A DNA stretch of 64,000 nt, taken from NCBI GenBank assembly GCA_002269645.1, contig NIVC01001498.1, forward strand, positions 214,602 through 278,601, written 5' to 3'. The notes beneath the pieces were generated by a model, which made no database searches, had not been told where the DNA came from, and saw only the letters and a list, made by a program, of their open reading frames with translations. The DNA is from Macrostomum lignano (lineage: Eukaryota). This document shows positions 2,095 through 64,000 of this stretch, one piece after another. Position numbers and translations under genes: made by a program. Each line of letters opens with the position of its first letter. Position 1 is the first letter of the stretch.

Positions 2095-5000
2095 CTCCAC
2101 TCCTCTCATCTCGTCTCTCTTTTCCTCTCATCTTCTCTCCTCTCATCTCGTCTCTCCTTTCCCCTCATCTTCTCTCCTCCCATCTCGTCTCTCCTTTCCC
2201 CCCATCTTCTCTCCTCCCATCTCGTCTCTCCTTCCCTCCCATCTTCTCTCCTCCCATCTCGTCTCTCCTCCCCCCCATCTTCTATCCTCCCATCTCGTCT
2301 CTCCTTCCCCCCCATCTTCTCTCCTCCCATCTCGTCTCTCCTTCCCCCCATCTTCTCTCCTCCCATCTCGTCTCTCTTTTCCCTCCCCCATCTTCTCTCC
2401 TCCCATCTCGTCTCTCCTTTCCCCCCCCCATCTTCTCTCCTCCCATCTCGTCTCTCCTTTCCCCTCATCTTCTCTCCTCTCCTCTCATCTCGTCTCTCCT
2501 TTCCCCTCATCTTCTCTCCTCCCATCTCGTCTCTCCTTTCCCCCCATCTTCTCTCCTCTCCTCCCATCTCGTCTCTCCTTTCCCTCCCCCATCTTCTCTC
2601 CTCCCATCTCGTCTCTCCTTTCCCCTCATCTTCTCTCCTCTCATCTCGTCTCTCCTTTCCCCCCATCTTCTCTCCTCCCATCTCGTCTCTCCTTTCCCCT
2701 CATCTTCTCTCCTCTCCTCTCATCTCGTCTCTCCTTTCCCCTCATCTTCTCTCCTCTCCTCTCATCTCGTCTCTTCTTTCCCCTCATCTCCTCTCCTCTC
2801 CTCTCATCTCGTCTCTCCTTTCCCCTCATCTTCTATCCTCTCCTCTCATCTCGTCTCTCCTTTCCCCTCATCTTCTCTCCTCTCCTCTCATCTCGTCTCT
2901 CCTTTCCCCTCATCTTCTCTCCTCTCCTCTCATCTCGTCTCTCCTTTCCCCCCATCTTCTCTCCTCCCATCTCGTCTCTCCTTCCCCCCCATCTTCTCTC
3001 CTCCCATCTCGTCTCTCCTTCCCCCCCATCTTCTCTCCTACCATCTCGTCTCTCCTTCCCCCCCCATCTTCTCTCCTCTCATCTCGTCTCTCCTTCCCCC
3101 CCATCTTCTCTCCTCTCATCTCGTCTCTCCTTTCCCCTCATCTTCTCTCCTCCCATCTCGTCTCTCCTTTCCCCCCATCTTCTCTCCTCCCATCTCGTCT
3201 CTCCTTCCCTCCCATCTTCTCTCCTCCCATCTCGTCTCTCCTTTCCCCCCCATCTTCTCTCTTCCCATCTCGTCTCTCCTTCCCCCCATCTTCTCTCCTC
3301 CCATCTCGTCTCTCTTTTCCCTCCCCCATCTTCTCTCCTCCCATCTCGTCTCTCCTTTCCCCCCCATCTTCTCTCCTCCCATCTCGTCTCTCCTTCCCTC
3401 CCATCTTCTCTCCTCCCATCTCGTCTCTCCTCCCCCCCCATCTTCTCTCCTCCCATCTCGTCTCTCCTTCCCCCCCATCTTCTCTCCTCCCATCTCGTCT
3501 CTCCTTCCCCCCATCTTCTCTCCTCCCATCTCGTCTCTCTTTTCCCTCCCCCATCTTCTCTCCTTCCATCTCGTCTCTCCTTTCCCCCCCATCTTCTCTC
3601 CTCCCATCTCGTCTCTCCTTTCCCCTCATCTTCTCTCCTCTCCTCTCATCTCGTCTCTCCTTTCCCCCCATCTTCTCTCCTCTCCTCTCATCTCGTCTCT
3701 CCTTTCCCCCCATCTTCTCTCCTCTCCTCCCATCTCGTCTCTCCTTTCCCTCCCCCATCTTCTCTCCTCCCATCTCGTCTCTCCTTTCCCCTCATCTTCT
3801 CTCCTCTCATCTCGTCTCTCCTTTCCCCCCATCTTCTCTCCTCCCATCTCGTCTCTCCTTTCCCCTCATCTTCTCTCCTCTCCTCTCATCTCGTTTCTCC
3901 TTTCCCCTCATCTTCTCTCCTCTCCTCTCATCTCGTCTCTCCTTTCCCCTCATCTCCTCTCCTCTCCTCTCATCTCGTCTCTCCTTTCCCCTCATCTTCT
4001 ATCCTCTCCTCTCATCTCGTCTCTCCTTTCCCCTCATCTTCTCTCCTCTCCTCTCATCTCGTCTCTCCTTTCCCCTCATCTTCTCTCCTCTCCTCTCATC
4101 TCGTCTCTCCTTTCCCCCCATCTTCTCTCCTCCCATCTCGTCTCTCCTTCCCCCCCATCTTCTCTCCTCCCATCTCGTCTCTCCTTCCCCCCATCTTCTC
4201 TCCTCCCATCTCGTCTCTCCTTCCCCCCCCATCTTCTCTCCTCTCATCTCGTCTCTCCTTCCCCCCCATCTTCTCTCCTCTCATCTCGTCTCTCCTTTCC
4301 CCTCATCTTCTCTCCTCCCATCTCGTCTCTCCTTTCCCCCCATCTTCTCTCCTCCCATCTCGTCTCTCCTTCCCTCCCATCTTCTCTCCTCCCATCTCGT
4401 CTCTCCTTCCCCCCCATCTTCTCTCCTCCCATCTCGTCTCTCCTTCCCCCCATCTTCTCTCCTCCCATCTCGTCTCTCTTTTCCCTCCCCCATCTTCTCT
4501 CCTCCCATCTCGTCTCTCCTTTCCCCCCCATCTTCTCTCCTCCCATCTCGTCTCTCCTTTCCCCCCATCTTCTCTCCTCCCATCTCGTCTCTCCTTTCCC
4601 CTCATCTTCTCTCCTCCCATCTCGTCTCTCCTTTCCCCCCATCTTCTCTCCTCCCATCTCATCTCTCCTTTCCCCCCATCTTCTCTCCTCTCCTCCATCT
4701 CGTCTCTCCTTTCCCTCCCCATCTTCTCTCCTCCCATCTCGTCTCTCCTTCCCTCCCATCTTCTCTCCTCCCATCTCGTCTCTCCTTTCCCCTCATCTTC
4801 TCTCCTCTCCTCTCATCTCTCCTTTCCCCTCATCTTCTCTCCTCTCCTCTCATCTCGTCTCTCCTTTCCCCTCATCTTCTCTCCTCTCCTCTCATCTCGT
4901 CTCTCCTTTCCCCTCATCTCCTCTCCTCTCCTCTCATCTCGTCTCTCCTTTCCCCTCATCTTCTATCCTCTCCTCTCATCTCGTCTCTCCTTTCCCCTCA

Positions 5001-6690
5001 TCTTCTCTCCTCTCCTCTCATCTCGTCTCTCCTTTCCCCTCATCTTCTCTCCTCTCCTCTCATCTCGTCTCTCCTTTCCCCCCATCTTCTCTCCTCCCAT
5101 CTCGTCTCTCCTTCCCCCCATCTTCTCTCCTCCCATCTCGTCTCTCCTTCCCCCCATCTTCTCTCCTCCCATCTCGTCTCTCCTTCCCCCCATCTTCTCT
5201 CCTCTCATCTCGTCTCTCCTTCCCCCCATCTTCTCTCCTCTCATCTCGTCTCTCCTTTCCCCCATCTTCTCTCCTCCCATCTCGTCTCTCCTTTCCCCCA
5301 TCTTCTCTCCTCCCATCTCGTCTCTCCTTCCCTCCCATCTTCTCTCCTCCCATCTCGTCTCTCCTTCCCCCCATCTTCTCTCCTCCCATCTCGTCTCTCC
5401 TTCCCCCATCTTCTCTCCTCCCATCTCGTCTCTCTTTCCCTCCCATCTTCTCTCCTCCCATCTCGTCTCTCCTTTCCCCCCATCTTCTCTCCTCCCATCT
5501 CGTCTCTCCTTTCCCCTCATCTTCTCTCCTCCCATCTCGTCTCTCCTTTCCCCCCATCTTCTCTCCTCCCATCTCATCTCTCCTTTCCCCCCATCTTCTC
5601 TCCTCTCCTCCCATCTCGTCTCTCCTTTCCCTCCCCCATCTTCTCTCCTCCCATCTCGTCTCTCCTTCCCTCCCATCTTCTCTCCTCCCATCTCGTCTCT
5701 CCTTTCCCCTCATCTTCTCTCCTCTCCTCTCATCTCTCCTTTCCCCTCATCTTCTCTCCTCTCCTCTCATCTCGTCTCTCCTTTCCCCTCATCTTCTATC
5801 CTCTCCTCTCATCTCGTCTCTCCTTTCCCCTGATCTTCTATCCTCTCCTCTCATCTCGTCTCTCCTTTCCCCTCATCTTCTCTCCTCTCCTCTCATCTCG
5901 TCTCTCCTTTCCCCTCATCTTCTCTCCTCTCATCTCGTCTCTCCTTTCCCCTCATCTTCTCTCCTCTCATCTCGTCTCTCCTTTCCCTCCCCCATCTTCT
6001 CTCCTCCCATCTCGTCTCTCCTTTCCCCTCATCTTCTCTCCTCTCCTCTCATCTCGTCTCTCCTTTCCCCCCATCTTCTCTCCTCTCATCTCGTCTCTCC
6101 TTTCCCCTCATCTTCTCTCCTCTCTTCTCATCTCGTCTCTCCTTTCCCCTCATCTTCTCTCCTCTCCTCTCATCTCGTCTCTCCTTTCCCCTCATCTTCT
6201 ATCCTCTCCTCTCATCTCGTCCCTCCTTTCCCCTGATCTTCTATCCTCTCCTCTCATCTCGTCTCTCCTTTCCCCTCATCTTCTCTCCTCTCCTCTCATC
6301 TCGTCTCTCCTTTCCCCTCATCTTCTCTTCTCTCATCTCGTCTCTCCTTTCCCTCCCCCATCTTCTCTCCTCCCATCTCGTCTCTCCTTTCCCCTCATCT
6401 TCTCTCCTCTCATCTCGTCTCTCCTTTCCCCCCATCTTCTCTCCTCTCATCTCGTCTCTCCTTTCCCCCATCTTCTCTCCTCTCATCTCGTCTCTCCTTT
6501 CCCCTCATCTTCTCTCCTCTCATCTCGTCTCTCTTTCCCCCCCATCTTCTCTCCTCTCATCTCGTCTCTCCTCTTCTCTCCTCTCATCTCGTCTCTCCTT
6601 TCCTCTCATCTTCTCTCCACTCATCTTCTCTCATCTCATCGCATCTCATCGCATCTCATCGCATCTCATCTCCTCTTCTCAATTTTCTTC
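2095..6690. repeat. 4.6-kb polypyrimidine satellite, about 35-45-bp units (CATCTTCTCTCCTCCCATCTCGTCTCTCCTTTCCCC)
   Basis: Almost only C/T on the plus strand. Source of the 1272-1563 aa spurious ORFs. Confidence 0.95.
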
Positions 6691-13963: not shown

Positions 13964-19509
<5,546 letters not shown>

Positions 19510-49732: not shown

Positions 49733-55880
<6,148 letters not shown>

Positions 55881-58196: not shown

Positions 58197-58441
58197 CACA
58201 TTTTCACGTTCAATTTTGATCAGAGTCCACAGTTCTAAAAAAACTAGCGGAAAGTCAATTCAGACTGGGGACATTTTTGTCTGTGGCTAAACCTTGCTTC
58301 AGTGGCAAAATGGACAGAATGTTTTGAGCTGGGGTTTGTTTTTATTGATTTTCCGTAAGCGTTGCCTGAATTGTCTGAATTGAATTTCCGCTAGTTTTTT
58401 TAGAACTGGACTTTGATCAAAATTGAACGTGAAAAGGTGTG
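58197..58441. mobile_element. MITE, 245 bp, about 69-bp terminal inverted repeats, TA-flanked (Tc1/mariner-type)
   Basis: Left arm 58197-58265 (CACATTTTCACGTTCAATTTTGATCAGAGTCCACAGTTCTAAAAAAACTAGCGGAAAGTCAATTCAGAC) is the near-perfect reverse complement of 58373-58441. TA at 58195-96 and 58442-43. Confidence 0.8.
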
Positions 58442-58645
58442 TAGTTGCTTACAAGCAACAAGCAGAGTTTGATTTTTCGTGAGAAATACGACTCAAGTGG
58501 GATGAATCGTTGTGAACTAGAATCTAATTGCTTTGCCAACAAGTTCTCGTATTATTAGAAAACAACTGGAGTTAGACGTCGTGTAATTTCTTGGTCTATC
58601 TATAAAGCCTAAGGGTCTCAAAATGGAAGCGTGGCCGATTTTTTC

Positions 58646-58858
58646 GCATGCAATGGCGGGTACAGCACGCCTGTGTAGCATGAGACAGACTAGGCCTACG
58701 AGCTAAGGTCTGCGATCCTACACACCTGCACCCCCTCTATTCTGGTGCAGGAATGGCAGGAGAACTCTCTCCAAGCTGACTCGCAAGCCGACCCAGGGGT
58801 TCGCGCCCCGCATGTGTTCAAGGCAGCCCTAGGGCTGCTGGACTGACTGGGCTCCGGC
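58646..58858 (+). ncRNA. HDV/CPEB3-like self-cleaving ribozyme at the retrotransposon 5' end
   Basis: P1 GCATGC 58646-51 / GCATGT 58810-15 (G.U first pair); P2 CCCAG 58792-96 / CTGGG 58847-51; P3 GGG 58797-99 / CCC 58807-09; L3 TTCGCGC; P1.1 C58802-G58816; P4 58818-58842; J4/2 CTGA with catalytic C58843. Paired by eye, activity untested. Confidence 0.75.
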
Positions 58859-59242
58859 GGCGGCAACCCATCCGTGGCCTTTTGGCCAAGTTGGGTACGG
58901 GCTCCGCCCGGAAGTGAACCTGTGCAGGTACCTCTGGCCACGGCTCTGAGGAACAGGTACCACCCTCTGACCTTAACAGGGTATGCGGCCAGTCCGCAGG
59001 CTCCGGAGGCAGTCCTCCTGCTTCCCTCAAGGGCCCAGTGTAGTACCGTGCTGATGGTCCTTTGGTTCGGCCTCTGGTTTCTCCAAGCCGGGCTCTTAGC
59101 CGGGGAGTTTCTCGGTTGCTAGCGGTCGGGCCGGTACGGGCTTAAGCCACCCCCGGTCGCTGCCTCTTGGCCTGGCTGTTGGGTTTGGGGTTACGGCCCA
59201 GCGGCTTCTCACCTCTAGTCCCCACTCGCCTTTCAGCGACTC

Positions 59243-60695
59243 ATGGAGTATTCATTTACACCTAACACGACCGATGCTGCTGGAGCACCAACCGAGGTTG
59301 GCACCGCGGCTCAGCCGGACATTCGCAACACCGGAACCCCGGTGCCTCTCAATCTGCCGCTGCCGCCGCTCAGGATAATACCGGAGTGGCTGGACAAGAC
59401 AGCGGACCTCAGATTTCGAAAAAGAAGGCCCGTAGCATTGCTCGGTACAAAGCCTTTCTCCAGCGCAAAGCAGAGGAACGGAGGAATGCGAAAGCCGCCC
59501 CTCCGGCCACCTCTGAGGAGGGTGCCAGTAACTCTGCGAACCCCGCGGAGGAGCCGACATCCGACAAGGGGGTGGACCCCGCGCGCCGGTCTGATGCGTC
59601 AGGTGCCGCCGAATCTCCTGGTGCGGCTGGCCCCTCCCGTGACCGGACCTCTGCCCGTGTGGAAGCTCCCACGGCTGTGGAGGGATCCAAAGCGGGGGGC
59701 GCTGGCCAAACCACAAAGCCGAAGCGAACCTACGCGGCTATGGCCAAGAGGCAGCCGGCCCTGGTTATCCAAGGCCAGGAGACGCCTCTTACGGCCGAAC
59801 AGCTCCACCTTATCTGGCGCAGGTTGGACTCCCACCTGGTCAAGATGGCCTTGAGCGGCACCATCATTCGAGTCCAAAAGACGAAAGTCGAGGGCCAAGC
59901 CCTCTATATCCAGCCCGCCGACAGCCAGTCAGGACAGCAGCTCGAAACTTCGACTGGGGTACGGAGCTGGAGAACCTGTTCATCTACAGGGAGGACGAGC
60001 GACCCGGACACACCGGCACCGTGCCTGGATTCCGGCTCGCAGCTGCATCACCAAGGCCGACGAGCTGCGTCACCTGCTAGTGGCTTCCAACCCGGAGCTA
60101 CCGGCCAATGGTGTCGTAGTTCACGAGACCATCTCCAAGCCGGGCGGAGACGGTTTCACGGCTATTCTTGGACTGTCGGATAGCTGGATGCTCCGCTACC
60201 CGGACATGTCCATCATCTCTGTCGGGCTGTTGCAGATTCAGCTCTTTAGCTTCGAGTCTGACGCCACCCGCCCACCGCCCCCGGAGAAGCGTAAGCGGGC
60301 AGTCGGGGCTCTGCCGGCGGAAACGCCCAGGAAAAGAAGCTCCCGGCCGTCACGACCCCTCCGAGGACGTGGACCCTGTCAGAGGGAAAGCCGCGAAAGC
60401 TGCAGCAACAGGCGAACGTGGAAAGGGCCGGAAACCCGCCCGGAACACTATCCGCTCTGGTCTGACTCAGCGCGCGAAGCAGCTGCTGGACACCGCCAAG
60501 GCCCCCAACCGCAGCCACCCCCAGCCCAGTGTCACCACTGTGACTCCCCCGGAAAACCGGGCCGAGAGCGAGAATGCCGCCCAGGTAGCGACATCGCCCT
60601 CGACCATGGAATCCATCCGGGAGGAGCCCATGGAGCTGGAGCCTGAAGCTATCGGCGAGGCAGAAGAGGCAGCTCTCCTGCACAACTCGCCTTGA
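59243..60695 (+). CDS. Retrotransposon ORF1 (DUF4780-like by recall), broken by about five -1 frameshifts
   Basis: ATG 59243. Reconstructed frames give RTYAAMAKRQPALVIQGQETPLTAEQLHLIW, RHRAWIP, LRHLLVASNPEL, and end at HNSP-TGA 60695. No CCHC knuckle seen. Confidence 0.65.
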
Positions 60696-60740
60696 GCCGG
60701 CAGGAAGGAAGCTGCGCGGACCACTCGTGGAATCCCCGGA

Positions 60741-63700
60741 GTGGACATCCTGCAGCTAAACCTGCACCACTGCATCGCGGCCTCGACCAACCTGATGCGG
60801 GTGGCAAACTTTGCGAAACCGGGCATCATCCTACTCCAGGAGCCCTGGACAAAGAAAGGTAAGATTCCGAATATTCCTGCTGGTTTTGACTGTTTTCAGG
60901 ACCCTCAAAACCCCAGAGCAGCCATGTTCGTGTCTACCCATCTCAAAGCTTGGCACAGACCGGACCTCTCTGACAGAGATCTCTGTGTCATTCAGTCCAA
61001 CCACATTATCACCAACCGCACGGTCATAATCGCCTCGATTTATATCCCTGGCGATGGCCCCGCGGTTCCACCCAACCTCACCTCCCTCGTGGACTACTGC
61101 TCTAACCGTAGGTTCGAGCTGCTGGTGGCGGGCGACATCAACGCTCACCACACCCACTGGGGCAGTAATTCTTCCAATAGCAGAGGCGAGGAACTCCTTG
61201 CTTACATCTGCACCACCAACACTGAGTTTTGCAACATTGGTGGAACCCCCACCTTTGACAACGGGCGATGGACGGAGGCCCTCGACGTTACCCTCGTCTC
61301 CCATGGCCTGGCTCCTTTAGTCAAGGACTGGGAAGTTTGGGACGAAGAGGAGTCTCTGTCTGACCATCGCTTCGTTCGTTTTCGATTGCAATCCTCTTGC
61401 CCCAAGCCTCACATTCTGTGGAAAAGGAACGTCTGGAACACTGACTGGACGGCTTTCACGGAAACCCTGAAATGCCAGACAGATCAGCTGACTACCGTCG
61501 CTCCAACCACCTGTCAGGAAGTGGATGACCTTGCAGACTTGCTCAGCAAGACCGTCCTGACAGCCCATGAGGCTTCCTGTCCTCTTAAAGCCTACAAAGG
61601 CAAAAAATCCGCCCCCCCCTGGTGGCACCCGGCGCTCGGATCCCTCCGGCGCAAGGCAAAGTGCCTCCAACGGAAAGCTCGCAAGAGCAAGGACCCAGCT
61701 GACCTGGCCGCCTATCAAGAAGCGATCCGCGACTTTAAGCGTGAAACCAGGAAAGCCAAGTCCGACAAATGGCGCCAATACTGCGCGGAGTTAGAAGGCA
61801 CCCGCCCTACTTCGCGCGTAGTTAAGGCTCTCACCCTCGACAAAATGTCAAAGCTCTCAGTTATTAAAAGACCGGACGGCCGGCTCGCTGAGAACCCTGG
61901 GGAATCGCTGGACATTATGCTCACCAGCTCTTTCCTACGTGCCGCACCGCAGCTAGGCCCACCGGACCACTCTCCGGGCGGACAGATCCTGGCTTCGACC
62001 ATCATTACCAGAGAGAGGACGGCTCGCGCCGCAAAATCCTTCTCTCCTTTCAAGTCCCCGGGTCCTGACAACATTTATCCTGCCTTCCTTCATGAGGCAG
62101 TTAAAAATGACAGGTTTCTCGGCCTCCTCTGCAACCTCTTCAAGGCCAGCATTACCCTCGGGTATGTGCCAAAAGCCTGGCAAGAGGCTACGGTAGTCTT
62201 CATACCCAAGCCAGGAAAGGGAGACTATCACTCCGCCAAAGCTTACCGCCCTATCAGTCTGACGTCCTTCTTCCTCAAACTGATGGAACGGCTGGTGCTC
62301 TGGCGCCTTCTCCTCGTTGAGCTGAGGAACTCCCCGCTCTCCCCTAATCAGCACGCCTTTCGTCCTGGACGTTCCATCGAAAGTGCGCTGCACGCCATTG
62401 TCGACAAGCTGGAGCGCGCCGTGCTTGGCAGTGGATACGCGCTGTCGCTTTTCCTCGACATTGATGGTGCTTTCAACAATGTGCTCTTTGAAGCCTTTAA
62501 GCGAGCCCTGGAATCCCGGGACACGCACGAGCACCTCACCCGCTGGATCATGTACATGGTCTCCCATCGTACTGCCACCTCGCACCTCCTGGGACACTCA
62601 CGCTCCGTGGAAGTCCAGAAGGGCGGACCGCAAGGTGGAGTCCTCAGCCCGATCCTCTGGAACTTAGTCATGGACGAGCTGCTTTGCAGCCCGCATCCGG
62701 ACCCTGTTCAGAAGGTCGGCTACGCGGACGATGTTACCGCCACTGTGGCTGGACCATCGCCCGCGGTCCTCAGGGACCTCCTTCAAGCCTTCATTCACCG
62801 TACCGAGCGCTGGGCACATAGCTGCGGCCTCAGGTTCTCTGAGTCTAAAACCGTGGCTATCATGTTCACCAGCCGCCGAAACTGGAGGATCGAACCGCTC
62901 TCCCTGTATGGCAAACCTGTTGCCATGGAGAAACAAACTAGATGTCTGGGCGTCACCCTCGACCACAGGTTGAGCTGGACCCCGCACGTCCAAACGAAAG
63001 CCCGCAAAGCTCTCGCGACTCTCGCGCAGATCCGCAGAGCTTTCGGTGCTACCTGGGGCCTCACCCCCGCCGCCTCTGGTGGATTTACACTGCCATTGTT
63101 AGACCGGCCATCTCCTTCGCCGGCTTCATTTGGAACAGTGCCCTAGAGGTGAAAGGGGTTCTTGAGGTTTTAAATAGGGTGCAAGGCCGCGCTTGTCGAG
63201 CTATCATGAGCGCGGCTCCCTCTACGCCCTTCGCTGGCATGAACTCCTTCTTGGACATTCCCCCCCTCGACCTCTTTGTTAGAGGGGAGGCAATGAAAAC
63301 CACCCGTCGTCTGCTTGACGCGGGTGTCCAAATCCAGAAGCAGTTTGCCTTCAGAAAGCGGAACCTCCGGCCGCATGGCGACCTCAGCCTGCGAGACCTG
63401 GAAGCAGCGAGAGGCCTGCTGACCCTCTCGGACGGAATCCCGTCCACGCTCTGCCCCGGCTCAAATTCAAAACCAGCATTCCACCACGCCATGAAGCGAG
63501 AGACAACTGGAAACCCCATGAAATCCACTGCTTCACTGACGGGTCCCAAATCAACTCCGCCTCTGGATACGGCTACTGCATCGTGTCTGGAGGGAGAACT
63601 GTGGCGACCTTCTCCCAACACACCGGCACCTGCTCCACCGTCTTCCAGAACGAAGTTCTCGCCATCAGCTCCTGCGCCATGGAGCTGTACAATCAGCGCG

Positions 63701-63980
63701 TCTGGGGGAAGGAAATTACCCTCCACTCGGACAGTCAAGCGGCGATTCACGCCCTTGAGCGCACCACCACCTGCTCGCGTACAGTCCTCGACTGCATCGG
63801 GCAGCTCAACCGCTTAAGCGCCTCCAACAAGGTGTCCCTAAGGTGGATCCCCGGGCATTCGGGCCACCCGGCAACGAGCTGGCCGATCGCCTGGCCAAGG
63901 CTGGCTCGACCGGTTCTTTCACTGGTCCCCTGCCCGTGGCCCCCACCCCCATCGCCGTTGTCACCACTCGGATCAACTAG
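60741..63980 (+). CDS. Retrotransposon ORF2: APE endonuclease, reverse transcriptase, RNase H (three -1 frameshifts, TAG at 63978)
   Basis: APE: ILQLNLHH, LLQEPW, AGDINAHH, LDVTL, SDHR. RT: KSPGPD, FIPKPGK, YRPISL, QHAFR, FLDIDGAF, PQGGVLSP, YADD, LGVTLD. RNase H after restoring frames: FTDGS, QNEV, SDSQAA, WIPGHSG, NELADRLAK. Confidence 0.92.
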
Positions 63981-64000
63981 TGGGTGGCTTCTAAGCACAG

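What the first reader, a model, noticed from the sequence alone, without database searches (positions are those of the whole stretch)
58646..58858. HDV/CPEB3-like self-cleaving ribozyme defines the 5' end of the retrotransposon
Seen: every element of the nested double pseudoknot occurs in the correct order. P1 is GCATGC (58646-51) with GCATGT (58810-15), giving a G.U pair at the predicted cleavage site. A 140-nt J1/2 insert carries its own hairpins (CAGACT/GGTCTG, CCTGCACC/GGTGCAGG, GGAGA/TCTCC). P2 is CCCAG/CTGGG, extendable by GCCG/CGGC. P3 is GGG/CCC. L3 is UUCGCGC (CPEB3 has UUCACGU; the U...G reverse-wobble positions are kept). P1.1 is a single pair, C58802-G58816, next to a U.U mismatch, as in CPEB3. 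P4 is UC-AA-GGCAGCCC/GGGCUGCU-G-GA, and J4/2 is C-U-G-A (C-N-R-A) with catalytic C58843. P1 starts right after a T-rich host-like flank, near where the high-GC element sequence begins. Established: HDV-like ribozymes process the 5' ends of co-transcribed non-LTR elements such as R2, RTE, L1Tc and Baggins. Inference: this element frees its RNA from a host read-through transcript by cleaving between C58645 and G58646. Caveats: P1 is 6 bp rather than 7, and a weaker alternative P1 strand (GCATG) exists at 58678.
Basis: partly seen in the sequence, partly recalled or inferred. Interest (0 to 1): 0.9.

Follow-up and report, generated by a model that had tools for sequence, protein, structure and literature searches.

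The report
HDV-like ribozyme heading a retrotransposon
The first ~213 bases of a decayed LINE-type retrotransposon fold into the double-pseudoknot shape of a hepatitis-delta-like self-cutting RNA, and a distant relative keeps that shape through matching base changes, so this is very probably a real but ordinary example of a known way for such elements to trim their own RNA.

Summary
Window 58646-58858 (+) carries P1, a structured 140-nt J1/2 insert, extended P2, P3, a 7-nt L3, P1.1, P4 and a C-U-G-A J4/2, in the order of an HDV-like ribozyme.

A descriptor built from textbook HDV-like features hits only this site in the 64-kb window. Shuffles give 0.075 hits per window, and 1 of 300 shuffles of the element's first kb gives a hit.

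The only relative with a 5' UTR that I could fetch is L001 (ORF2 76% identical, about 50% identity at aligned window bases).
- All 32 tested pairs form in L001.
- Six pairs changed on both sides: P1, P2, P1.1, two in the J1/2 closing helix and one in a J1/2 hairpin.
- Slid controls give 30-42% pairing and at most one double change.
- The L001 contig starts exactly at the base aligned to G58646.

Against: Rfam models see nothing, only two sequences exist, L001 has a G-C cleavage-site pair and CUGC in J4/2, and cleavage is untested. The window copy has frameshifts, and no sense-strand host transcript is evident.

Verdict: a new member of a known kind (R2, RTE, L1Tc and Baggins carry such ribozymes), probably in a flatworm element. 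Moderate-to-low interest.

The parts
58646..58651 (+). P1 5' strand (GCAUGC). The predicted cleavage is 5' of G58646, which is also the first base of the element.
   Evidence: All 6 bp are kept in L001 (GCCUGC/GCAGGC). Pair 3 changes A-U to C-G and pair 1 changes G.U to G-C. The L001 contig starts at the aligned G.
58652..58655 (+). 4-nt linker (AAUG) between P1 and the J1/2 domain
   Evidence: identical in L001.
58656..58784 (+). Structured J1/2 peripheral ('P1.2-like') domain. The closing helix is 58656-61/58779-84. Inside it lie hairpins at 58686-91/58707-12, 58725-32/58744-51 and 58759-63/58768-72.
   Evidence: The closing helix is kept, with two double changes (G-C to A-U, U-A to G-C). 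Hairpin 58686-91/58707-12 is kept, with one double change. By eye, hairpin 58725-30/58746-51 corresponds to L001 80-85/90-95 with two double changes. Hairpin 58759-72 is not conserved in L001.
58785..58786 (+). 2-nt linker (AA) before the extended P2
   Evidence: identical in L001.
58787..58796 (+). P2 5' strand: extension GCCG 58787-90, unpaired A58791, core CCCAG 58792-96
   Evidence: The extension is invariant. The core is kept, with C-G changed to U-A at 58793/58850. L001 also has one extra A-U pair at the P3-proximal end.
58797..58799 (+). P3 5' strand (GGG)
   Evidence: invariant.
58800..58806 (+). L3 (UUCGCGC). U58800 and G58805 sit at the reverse-wobble positions. C58802 is the P1.1 partner.
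   Evidence: L001 L3 is UCUCCGU, so U1 and G6 are kept while positions 2-4 and 7 change. PMC3774820 describes the L3 G as highly conserved.
58807..58809 (+). P3 3' strand (CCC)
58810..58815 (+). P1 3' strand (GCAUGU)
58816..58817 (+). J1/4, the P1.1 3' side: G58816 pairs with C58802, and U58817 lies opposite U58801
   Evidence: L001 has U181-A195 (both sides changed) and C180-G196 (a pair gained).
58818..58842 (+). P4 hairpin: U58818-A58842, C58819-G58841, an internal loop, then 7 bp 58822-28/58833-39, with loop CUAG
   Evidence: L001 has a longer P4 of different sequence at the same place (198-227, 12 bp).
58843..58846 (+). J4/2 (CUGA). C58843 is the predicted catalytic cytosine, equivalent to C75 of HDV.
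   Evidence: L001 has CUGC at the aligned place, so the C is kept and the final A is not.
58847..58858 (+). P2 3' strand: core CUGGG 58847-51, unpaired CUC, extension CGGC 58855-58
58859..59242 (+). Rest of the 5' UTR, with blocks conserved in L001 and further covarying hairpins
   Evidence: Examples: 59176-85/59195-204 is 10 bp with 3 double changes; 59098-105/59110-17 is 8 bp with 2 double changes.
59243..60700 (+). ORF1 (start ATG 59243), broken by at least one frameshift near 59945-60005
   Evidence: tblastn of the intact L001 ORF1 matches in two frames.
60741..64000 (+). ORF2 (APE endonuclease, reverse transcriptase, RNase H). It has at least three frameshifts and runs off the end of the window.

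Best explanation
Window 58646-58858 is the HDV-like self-cleaving ribozyme of a non-LTR (LINE-type) retrotransposon that encodes APE, RT and RNase H. It forms the first 213 nt of the element RNA.

The fold is shown by sequence and covariation. P1 (58646-51/58810-15) stacks on P1.1 and P4. P2 (58787-96/58847-58) stacks on P3 (58797-99/58807-09). Together they make a nested double pseudoknot. A 129-nt structured J1/2 domain is closed by its own helix. It is joined by 4-nt and 2-nt linkers to P1 and to an extended P2, so it would hold P1 and P2 side by side.

The chemistry is inferred from what is established for HDV ribozymes. The 2'-OH of C58645 attacks its own 3' phosphate, with Mg2+ and with C58843 in J4/2 acting as general acid. 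The upstream RNA is left with a 2',3'-cyclic phosphate, and the element RNA begins with a 5'-OH on G58646.

The biology is inferred from R2, RTE, L1Tc and Baggins. An element without a reliable promoter of its own is transcribed as part of a longer RNA. It cuts itself free at its exact 5' end, and reverse transcription of the full-length RNA rebuilds the ribozyme in each new copy. The structured leader may also help translate the uncapped RNA.

This particular copy is decayed, with frameshifts in both ORFs. Its ribozyme still has every consensus feature.
For: 1. All parts are present in the right order at the stated coordinates.
2. The strict descriptor finds only this site in 128 kb of scanned strand. 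Shuffles give 0.075 hits per window, and 1 of 300 shuffles of the element's first kb gives a hit.
3. L001 is an independent test. It shares 76% of ORF2 residues and about 50% identity at aligned window bases. 63 of 64 cells pair, and all 32 pairs form in L001. Six pairs changed on both sides: P1 A-U to C-G, P2 C-G to U-A, P1.1 C-G to U-A, two in the J1/2 closing helix and one in a J1/2 hairpin. Sliding the partners by 1-3 columns gives 30-42% pairing and 0-1 double changes.
4. Only 2.6% of arbitrary 6-bp window stems, and 2.7% of 5-bp stems, are kept with a double change in L001.
5. L3 keeps U1 and G6 while four of its other five positions (2, 3, 4 and 7) change. The C that opens J4/2 is kept.
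6. The L001 contig begins exactly at the base aligned to G58646. GC content rises from about 0.45 to about 0.62 across the boundary.
7. The architecture fits published large HDV-like ribozymes. A 6- or 7-bp P1 is normal, and a structured J1/2 ('P1.2') with short linkers and an extended P2 activates Agam-2 ribozymes (PMC4908430). R2 ribozymes have J1/2 loops of 216-498 nt (PMC3774820).
8. Baggins and RTE elements are already known to carry such ribozymes (PMC6765202).
Against: - No Rfam HDV-type model matches, even at E<=10 on the 96-nt core. Those models are narrow and do not model pseudoknots.
- The covariation rests on only two sequences.
- L001 has intact ORFs and so is presumably the more recently active copy. 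It departs from the consensus in two ways: its cleavage-site pair is G-C rather than G.U, and its J4/2 reads CUGC, lacking the 'constrained A'. In L001, G197 could also pair with C228 and sequester the presumed catalytic C.
- More distant relatives (35-38% ORF2 identity, loci L003-L011) show no HDV-like motif in their 5' regions.
- I found no sense-strand host transcription unit upstream of this copy.
- The sharp 5' end is equally expected for an internal promoter that starts transcription at +1.
- Cleavage has not been tested.
Confidence: 0.8

Rival explanations
1. The 5' leader is a conserved structured RNA with another job, such as an IRES-like translation element, an internal promoter read as DNA, or a binding or packaging site for ORF1/ORF2 protein. 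It only resembles the HDV fold and does not cleave. The sharp 5' end comes from transcription starting at +1.
For: The whole 5' UTR up to the ORF1 ATG is rich in conserved, covarying helices, not just the ribozyme part. In GC-rich sequence, relaxed HDV-like descriptors match often by chance. Rfam finds nothing. L001 lacks the J4/2 A and the G.U wobble. L1Tc shows that the same 5' bases can be both promoter and ribozyme (PMC3383444).
Against: A non-catalytic leader has no reason to keep this exact topology: a 3-bp P3, a 7-nt L3 with U1/G6, a P1.1 that covaries across a pseudoknot, a C opening J4/2, and P1 starting at the first base of the element. The strict descriptor is rare in shuffles. A dual role would not exclude cleavage.
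Confidence: 0.12
2. The family has a working ribozyme, but this window copy is a dead relic. The element has frameshifts and is not transcribed in the sense direction, so nothing is cleaved at this locus today.
For: ORF1 has at least 1 frameshift and ORF2 at least 3. The only recognisable neighbouring gene, an SNF/SLC6 transporter, is on the opposite strand. The locus lies in a dense field of tandem repeats.
Against: This copy's ribozyme has no visible lesion. All helices pair, and G.U, L3 U/G and CUGA are intact. It is more canonical than L001. This rival concerns expression, not identity, and is compatible with the best explanation.
Confidence: 0.4
3. The resemblance is a chance match of a permissive motif in GC-rich sequence and has no function.
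For: The core-only descriptor gives about 0.8 hits per shuffled window. The loose descriptor gives two further distinct sites elsewhere in the real window.
Against: All 32 pairs are kept in L001, six of them with double changes, against 30-42% pairing in slid controls. P1 starts exactly at the element and contig boundary. The strict descriptor gives 0.075 expected hits per window.
Confidence: 0.03

Closest known systems
HDV-like ribozymes of insect RTE elements (drz-Agam-2 family; PMC4908430)
   Same: Both sit at the 5' end of a non-LTR retrotransposon. Both have a large structured J1/2 ('P1.2') domain joined by short linkers, and a P2 extended beyond the usual ~7 bp. The 'pinch' architecture is the same: here a 4-nt and a 2-nt linker, and a P2 of 5+4 bp with an internal loop.
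   Different: The retrotransposon clade differs: RTE lacks RNase H and ORF1. There is no sequence similarity. Here the J1/2 domain is a multi-hairpin domain of 129 nt (about 152 nt in L001) rather than one long helix. Activity was measured for Agam-2 and not here.
R2 retrotransposon ribozymes (Drosophila, silkmoths and others; PMC3774820)
   Same: Both are HDV-like double pseudoknots at the 5' end, and cleavage defines the element's RNA 5' end. R2 has very long J1/2 loops (216-498 nt in silkmoths). The L3 G and the catalytic C are conserved. Covariation in P1 between species is used as support.
   Different: R2 inserts site-specifically in 28S rDNA and is co-transcribed by Pol I. It has a restriction-like endonuclease and a single ORF. 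This element has APE, RT and RNase H plus an ORF1, and it sits in non-rDNA sequence.
Baggins (LOA clade) and L1Tc (ingi clade) 5' HDV-like ribozymes (PMC6765202, PMC3185411)
   Same: These are RNase-H-bearing APE-type LINEs with an HDV-like ribozyme in their first bases. They insert with little site specificity and rely on read-through transcription. One ORF2 hit at 35% identity is named 'lian-aa1', and from my own knowledge Lian belongs to the LOA clade.
   Different: I could not read the Baggins ribozyme sequence or place this element on a tree. L1TcRz is compact (77 nt) and doubles as a promoter. Here the ribozyme spans 213 nt. The host is probably a flatworm, not an insect or a trypanosome.
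Mammalian CPEB3 intronic ribozyme
   Same: L3 is UUCGCGC here and UUCACGU in CPEB3 (mouse primer GTTCACGTCGC, PMC10274809).
   Different: CPEB3 is a compact ~68-nt ribozyme in a mammalian intron, unrelated to mobile elements. The relative L001 has a 2-bp P1.1 and a different L3, so the CPEB3 likeness belongs to this copy and not to the family.

Membership tests
HDV-like self-cleaving ribozymes | Nested double pseudoknot in the order P1, J1/2, P2, P3, L3, P3', P1', P1.1, P4, J4/2, P2' | tested here: met
   Searches give the coordinates listed under 'parts'. It is the only strict-descriptor hit in the window.
HDV-like self-cleaving ribozymes | P1 of 6-7 bp whose first nucleotide is the cleavage-site G, usually in a G.U wobble | tested here: met
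   The window has 6 bp with G58646.U58815. PMC4908430 states that P1 is 6 or 7 bp. L001 has G1-C194 instead of G.U, which is a deviation in the relative.
HDV-like self-cleaving ribozymes | A 3-bp P3 closing a ~7-nt L3 that carries the U...G reverse-wobble positions | tested here: met
   GGG/CCC is invariant. L3 is UUCGCGC in the window and UCUCCGU in L001, so U1 and G6 are kept. PMC3774820 describes the L3 G as highly conserved.
HDV-like self-cleaving ribozymes | P1.1: 1-2 pairs between L3 and the nucleotides directly 3' of P1 (the second pseudoknot) | tested here: met
   The window has C58802-G58816 plus a U.U mismatch. L001 has U181-A195 and C180-G196. One pair changed on both sides and one pair was gained.
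HDV-like self-cleaving ribozymes | A catalytic C opening J4/2, followed by a constrained A (C-N-R-A) | tested here: inconclusive
   The window has C58843-U-G-A, which meets the feature. L001 has C-U-G-C at the aligned place, so the C is kept and the A is missing. Catalytic function cannot be tested here.
HDV-like self-cleaving ribozymes | Helices supported by compensatory changes among relatives | tested here: met
   32 pairs, 98.4% of cells paired, 6 pairs changed on both sides, none broken in L001. Slid controls give 30-42% pairing and 0-1 double changes. Only two sequences were available.
HDV-like self-cleaving ribozymes | Match to a curated covariance model (Rfam HDV_ribozyme, CPEB3_ribozyme, drz-Agam and similar) | tested here: not met
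   Searches give no hit, even at E<=10. From my own knowledge, these models are lineage-specific, ignore pseudoknots and cannot span a 140-nt J1/2. Known HDV-like ribozymes were found with structure descriptors rather than sequence models (PMC6765202).
HDV-like self-cleaving ribozymes | Mg2+-dependent site-specific self-scission 5' of G1 that depends on the J4/2 cytosine | not testable with these tools
   This needs in vitro transcription and cleavage assays.
Ribozyme-terminated non-LTR retrotransposons (R2, RTE, L1Tc, Baggins type) | The ribozyme's G1 coincides with the first base of full-length element copies | tested here: met
   The L001 contig begins at the base aligned to G58646, and composition breaks there. 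This rests on one contig, and there is no second copy in the window.
LOA clade (Baggins/Lian/LOA) | ORF2 with APE, RT and RNase H plus a separate ORF1, and phylogenetic placement with LOA-clade RTs | tested here: inconclusive
   The domain order is met. Relatives' ORF1s carry DUF4780. One hit is named 'lian-aa1' at 35% identity. No tree was built and no reference LOA, I or R1 sequences were available.
CPEB3 ribozyme family | An orthologous ribozyme in an intron of the CPEB3 gene of mammals | tested here: not met
   The ribozyme lies at the 5' end of a retrotransposon, and there is no Rfam CPEB3 hit. Only L3 and P1.1 resemble CPEB3.

The most novel reading that the evidence does not exclude
The family's presumably active representative (L001, with intact ORFs) has a G-C cleavage-site pair and a J4/2 without the constrained A, while keeping a conserved 130-150-nt multi-hairpin J1/2 domain. 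If that version cleaves efficiently, this flatworm-type lineage uses a variant HDV-like active site. That site may be propped up by the peripheral domain, which might also serve as the ORF-protein-binding or IRES module. The lineage would then be a natural test of how far the J4/2 and G.U rules can be relaxed.
Probability: 0.15. Interest if true: 0.5.

Novelty: new member of a known kind. Interest (0 to 1): 0.35.

Why it matters
[quoted passage not shown] This finding extends a known mechanism rather than opening a new one.

Its value is local.
- It fixes the exact 5' end of this element family at G58646, which helps annotation.
- It adds an example from what is probably a flatworm (Macrostomum-like) genome. 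In another flatworm, Schistosoma mansoni, the non-LTR elements studied so far were linked to twister-variant ribozymes instead (PMC8501958 abstract).
- It provides a large multi-hairpin J1/2 domain with an extended P2 and short linkers. This fits the 'pinch' model of peripheral-domain activation (PMC4908430) and could be used to test it.

Tried and rejected
- **Rfam.** I scanned the whole window at gathering thresholds, then 58400-59400 and 58775-58870 at E<=10. No HDV-type hit appeared, only chance matches such as mir-8799 at E=2.9.
- **Alternative P1 5' strand GCAUG at 58678-82.** Rejected. L001 has GUAUG there, and L001's P1 3' strand (GCAGGC) would mismatch it.
- **A 7-bp P1 starting at C58645 (C58645-G58816), with cleavage one base upstream.** Not favoured. 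The L001 contig starts at the G. G58816 and its L001 counterpart A195 covary with L3 position 3 as P1.1. This is not strictly excluded.
- **Minimum-free-energy folds.** They cannot show pseudoknots, and they pair the 5' GC.UGC differently in the two sequences. Only the P1 pairing is common to both. Z-scores were modest, -1.8 and -2.7.
- **Other copies in the window.** None found.
- **More relatives.**
  - P0002's contig has no DNA available, and P0003's contig lacks the 5' UTR.
  - An ORF1 search found only Macrostomum lignano UniRef entries without contigs.
  - A search with an ORF1 fragment returned nothing, not even the protein it came from.
  - Two DNA-pattern scans of metagenome contigs gave 0 hits.
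- **Distant relatives at 35-38% ORF2 identity (L003-L011).** No credible HDV-like motif upstream of ORF1. Relaxed descriptors produced many chance hits in GC-rich leaders, so I dropped them.
- **MAFFT alignment A2.** It misaligns P4 and P2'. I used A1, where P2' is in register, and left P4 out of the pair count.

Full report
**1. What is at the coordinates.**
Reading 58300-59300 confirms every string and coordinate in the finding.
- P1: GCATGC 58646-51 pairs with GCATGT 58810-15. This is 6 bp, and the first pair is G58646.U58815.
- P2: CCCAG 58792-96 pairs with CTGGG 58847-51. The extension is GCCG 58787-90 with CGGC 58855-58, across a small internal loop.
- P3: GGG 58797-99 pairs with CCC 58807-09, enclosing the 7-nt L3 TTCGCGC.
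- P1.1: G58816, directly after P1, can pair with C58802 in L3, next to a U.U mismatch.
- P4: spans 58818-42.
- J4/2: CTGA 58843-46. It starts with the C that would correspond to the catalytic C75 of HDV.
It closes the whole J1/2 insert into a discrete domain. That domain is joined by AAUG to P1 and by AA to the extended P2.

**2. What the region belongs to.**
- GC content rises from about 0.41-0.49 upstream to about 0.6 from 59 kb to the end of the window.
- Downstream lie an ORF1 starting at ATG 59243 and an ORF2 from 60741. In the window the ORF2 matches the APE endonuclease and reverse transcriptase families.
- The intact ORF2 of relative L001 matches APE, RT and RNase H.
- ORF2 has 197 homologues. 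The best are P0001 (76% identity), P0002 (57%) and P0003 (47%), followed by a broad set at 35-38%. One of that set is named 'lian-aa1 retrotransposon protein'.
- ORF1 of the closest relative finds only Macrostomum lignano proteins. The window is therefore probably from a flatworm of that kind.
- The element is an RNase-H-bearing LINE, possibly of the LOA clade. I did not build a tree.
- The window copy is decayed. tblastn with the intact L001 proteins shows one frame change in ORF1 and three in ORF2.
- There is no other copy in the window.

**3. Is the motif more than chance?**
- A loose HDV-like descriptor gives three distinct sites on the window's + strand.
- A core-only descriptor gives about 0.8 hits per shuffled window.
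- Relaxed descriptors hit GC-rich leaders many times.
- The bare resemblance is therefore weak evidence.
- A strict descriptor with the textbook features hits only this site in the real window. Those features are a 6-7 bp P1 starting with G, a 5-bp P2, a 3-bp Watson-Crick P3, L3 with U1 and G6, at least one P1.1 pair, P4, and J4/2 of the form C-N-R-A.
- Dinucleotide-preserving shuffles give 0.075 hits per window on both strands. One of 300 shuffles of the element's first kb gives a hit.
- I wrote the descriptor after seeing the candidate, so this is an upper bound on its significance.
- Rfam's curated models see nothing at any threshold. Those models are narrow and ignore pseudoknots.

**4. 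The independent test.**
P0001 lies on a 6492-nt Logan contig, L001, which carries intact ORF1 and ORF2 and 598 nt of leader. The two leaders are only about 50% identical at aligned window bases.

On alignment A1 I marked P1, the J1/2 closing helix, one J1/2 hairpin, P2, the P2 extension, P3 and P1.1, which is 32 pairs.

Results of the pair count:
- 63 of 64 cells pair. The one exception is the window's own U.U.
- All 32 pairs form in L001.
- Six pairs changed on both sides:
  - P1 pair 3, A-U to C-G.
  - P2 pair 2, C-G to U-A.
  - P1.1, C-G to U-A.
  - Two pairs in the J1/2 closing helix.
  - One pair in hairpin 58686-91/58707-12.
- Five more pairs changed on one side and stayed paired.
- Sliding the 3' partners by 1-3 columns gives 30-42% pairing and 0-1 double changes.

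Empirical null: of all 6-bp stems that can be drawn in the window leader, 2.6% are kept with a double change in L001. For 5-bp stems the figure is 2.7%.

Seen directly in the sequences:
- L001 has an extra A-U pair inserted in P2.
- Its second P1.1 position is C-G where the window has U.U.
- L3 keeps U1 and G6 while positions 2, 3, 4 and 7 change.
- P4 is a different, longer hairpin at the same place.
- A second J1/2 hairpin (window 58725-30/58746-51, L001 80-85/90-95) has two more double changes.

P1, P2 and P1.1 together define the nested double pseudoknot. Covariation in all three is the strongest evidence available here.

**5. The 5' end.**
The L001 contig begins with GCCTGCAATGGCAG, aligned base for base with window GCATGCAATGGCGG at 58646. 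An assembly breaks at a repeat boundary, and a transcript contig ends at the RNA's end. Either way this marks G58646 as the family's first base, which is the predicted cleavage product. I could not find out what kind of run ERR14788467 is. The contig's 3' end has no poly(A). A sharp 5' end alone would also fit an internal promoter.

**6. Points against, or unresolved.**
- L001 is presumably the fitter copy. Its cleavage-site pair is G1-C194 rather than G.U, and it reads CUGC where the window has CUGA. It therefore lacks the 'constrained A' noted for R2 ribozymes (PMC3774820).
- G197 in L001 could also pair with C228.
- Only two sequences exist. All attempts to get more failed.
- Relatives at 35-38% ORF2 identity show no such motif. 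The ribozyme may be confined to this sub-lineage, or those contigs may lack true 5' ends.
- At this locus the only recognisable host gene is an SLC6/SNF transporter on the minus strand. Its most N-terminal exon seen is at 55638-55880. The element lies upstream of that gene and points away from it, so no sense read-through transcript is evident.

**7. How it most likely works.**
- Shown: the fold, its conservation and the coincidence with the element's 5' end.
- Inferred from established HDV ribozyme chemistry: the 2'-OH of C58645 attacks the scissile phosphate with Mg2+ and C58843 as general acid. This gives a 5'-OH on G58646.
- Inferred from PMC4908430: the closed J1/2 domain, with 4-nt and 2-nt linkers and an extended P2, matches the architecture in which a peripheral 'P1.2' domain pinches P1 and P2 together. 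In that work it accelerated cleavage by up to about three orders of magnitude.
- Inferred from R2, L1Tc, RTE and Baggins (PMC6765202): cleavage frees the element RNA from a longer transcript. The structured leader may also promote translation of the uncapped RNA.

**8. Comparison and novelty.**
The region works like the RTE (Agam-2), R2, L1Tc and Baggins ribozymes, and it passes every structural membership feature I could test in the window copy. It fails only the Rfam model match, and the J4/2 A is inconclusive in the relative. It is not a CPEB3 family member. Only L3 (UUCGCGC here, UUCACGU in CPEB3) and the single-pair P1.1 resemble CPEB3, and L001 does not share those traits.

I file it as a new member of a known kind, probably the first described for this flatworm-type LINE lineage. 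A search of the held papers for Macrostomum together with ribozyme found nothing relevant.

**9. Verdict.**
- My confidence that this is a genuine HDV-like ribozyme of the element family is about 0.8.
- My confidence that this decayed copy is cleaved in vivo today is lower.
- Interest is 0.35.

Noticed in passing
window 53651-55880, minus strand: There are three exons of a sodium:neurotransmitter symporter (SLC6/SNF) gene: 55638-55880 (Pfam SNF profile positions 1-37), 54572-54919 (52-151) and 53651-54184 (153-327). The introns between them are filled with micro- and minisatellites. The gene runs away from the retrotransposon.
   Followed up: partly
window 1-57353: The density of tandem repeats is extraordinary (52 TRF rows at score >=200). 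Examples are a 5.5-kb (ATCT)n-type array at 13964-19509, a 4.5-kb array of a 37-nt C/T-rich unit at 2100-6572, and many 15-45-nt minisatellites with extreme strand skew (GC skew down to -1.0).
   Followed up: no
window 58859-59242 (rest of the 5' UTR): Blocks are conserved with L001 (for example GCAGGTACCTCT, CCCAGTGT...CGTGCTG, TAAGCCACCCCCGG). Further helices are kept with compensatory changes (59176-85/59195-204 is 10 bp with 3 double changes; 59098-105/59110-17 is 8 bp with 2). The whole leader, not only the ribozyme, looks structurally constrained and may be IRES-like or protein-binding.
   Followed up: partly
L001 189-237: The relative with intact ORFs has a G1-C194 cleavage-site pair, J4/2 CUGC instead of CUGA, an extra A175-U232 pair in P2, and a longer P4 (198-227). 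G197 could pair with C228, the presumed catalytic C.
   Followed up: partly
window 59243-64000: This copy of the element is decayed. The ORF1 match changes frame between about 59945 and 60005. The ORF2 match changes frame near 63035-63070, 63440-63460 and 63860-63875. The element runs off the window at about residue 1090 of about 1232 of ORF2.
   Followed up: yes
L004 1-650 and L005 150-370: The 5' regions of a distant relative (35-38% ORF2 identity) contain short tandem and inverted duplications instead of any HDV-like motif. The two contigs with the same ORF2 differ in how many repeat units they carry.
   Followed up: no
window 59128-59207: There is a weak Rfam match to the mir-8799 precursor (20.2 bits, E=2.9, gathering threshold 46.2) in the GC-rich leader. 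It is almost certainly chance.
   Followed up: no
tool behaviour: A homologue search with a 190-residue internal fragment of L001 ORF1 returned no hit at all, not even the parent protein P0121 found. The absence of ORF1 relatives in that search is therefore not informative.
   Followed up: no
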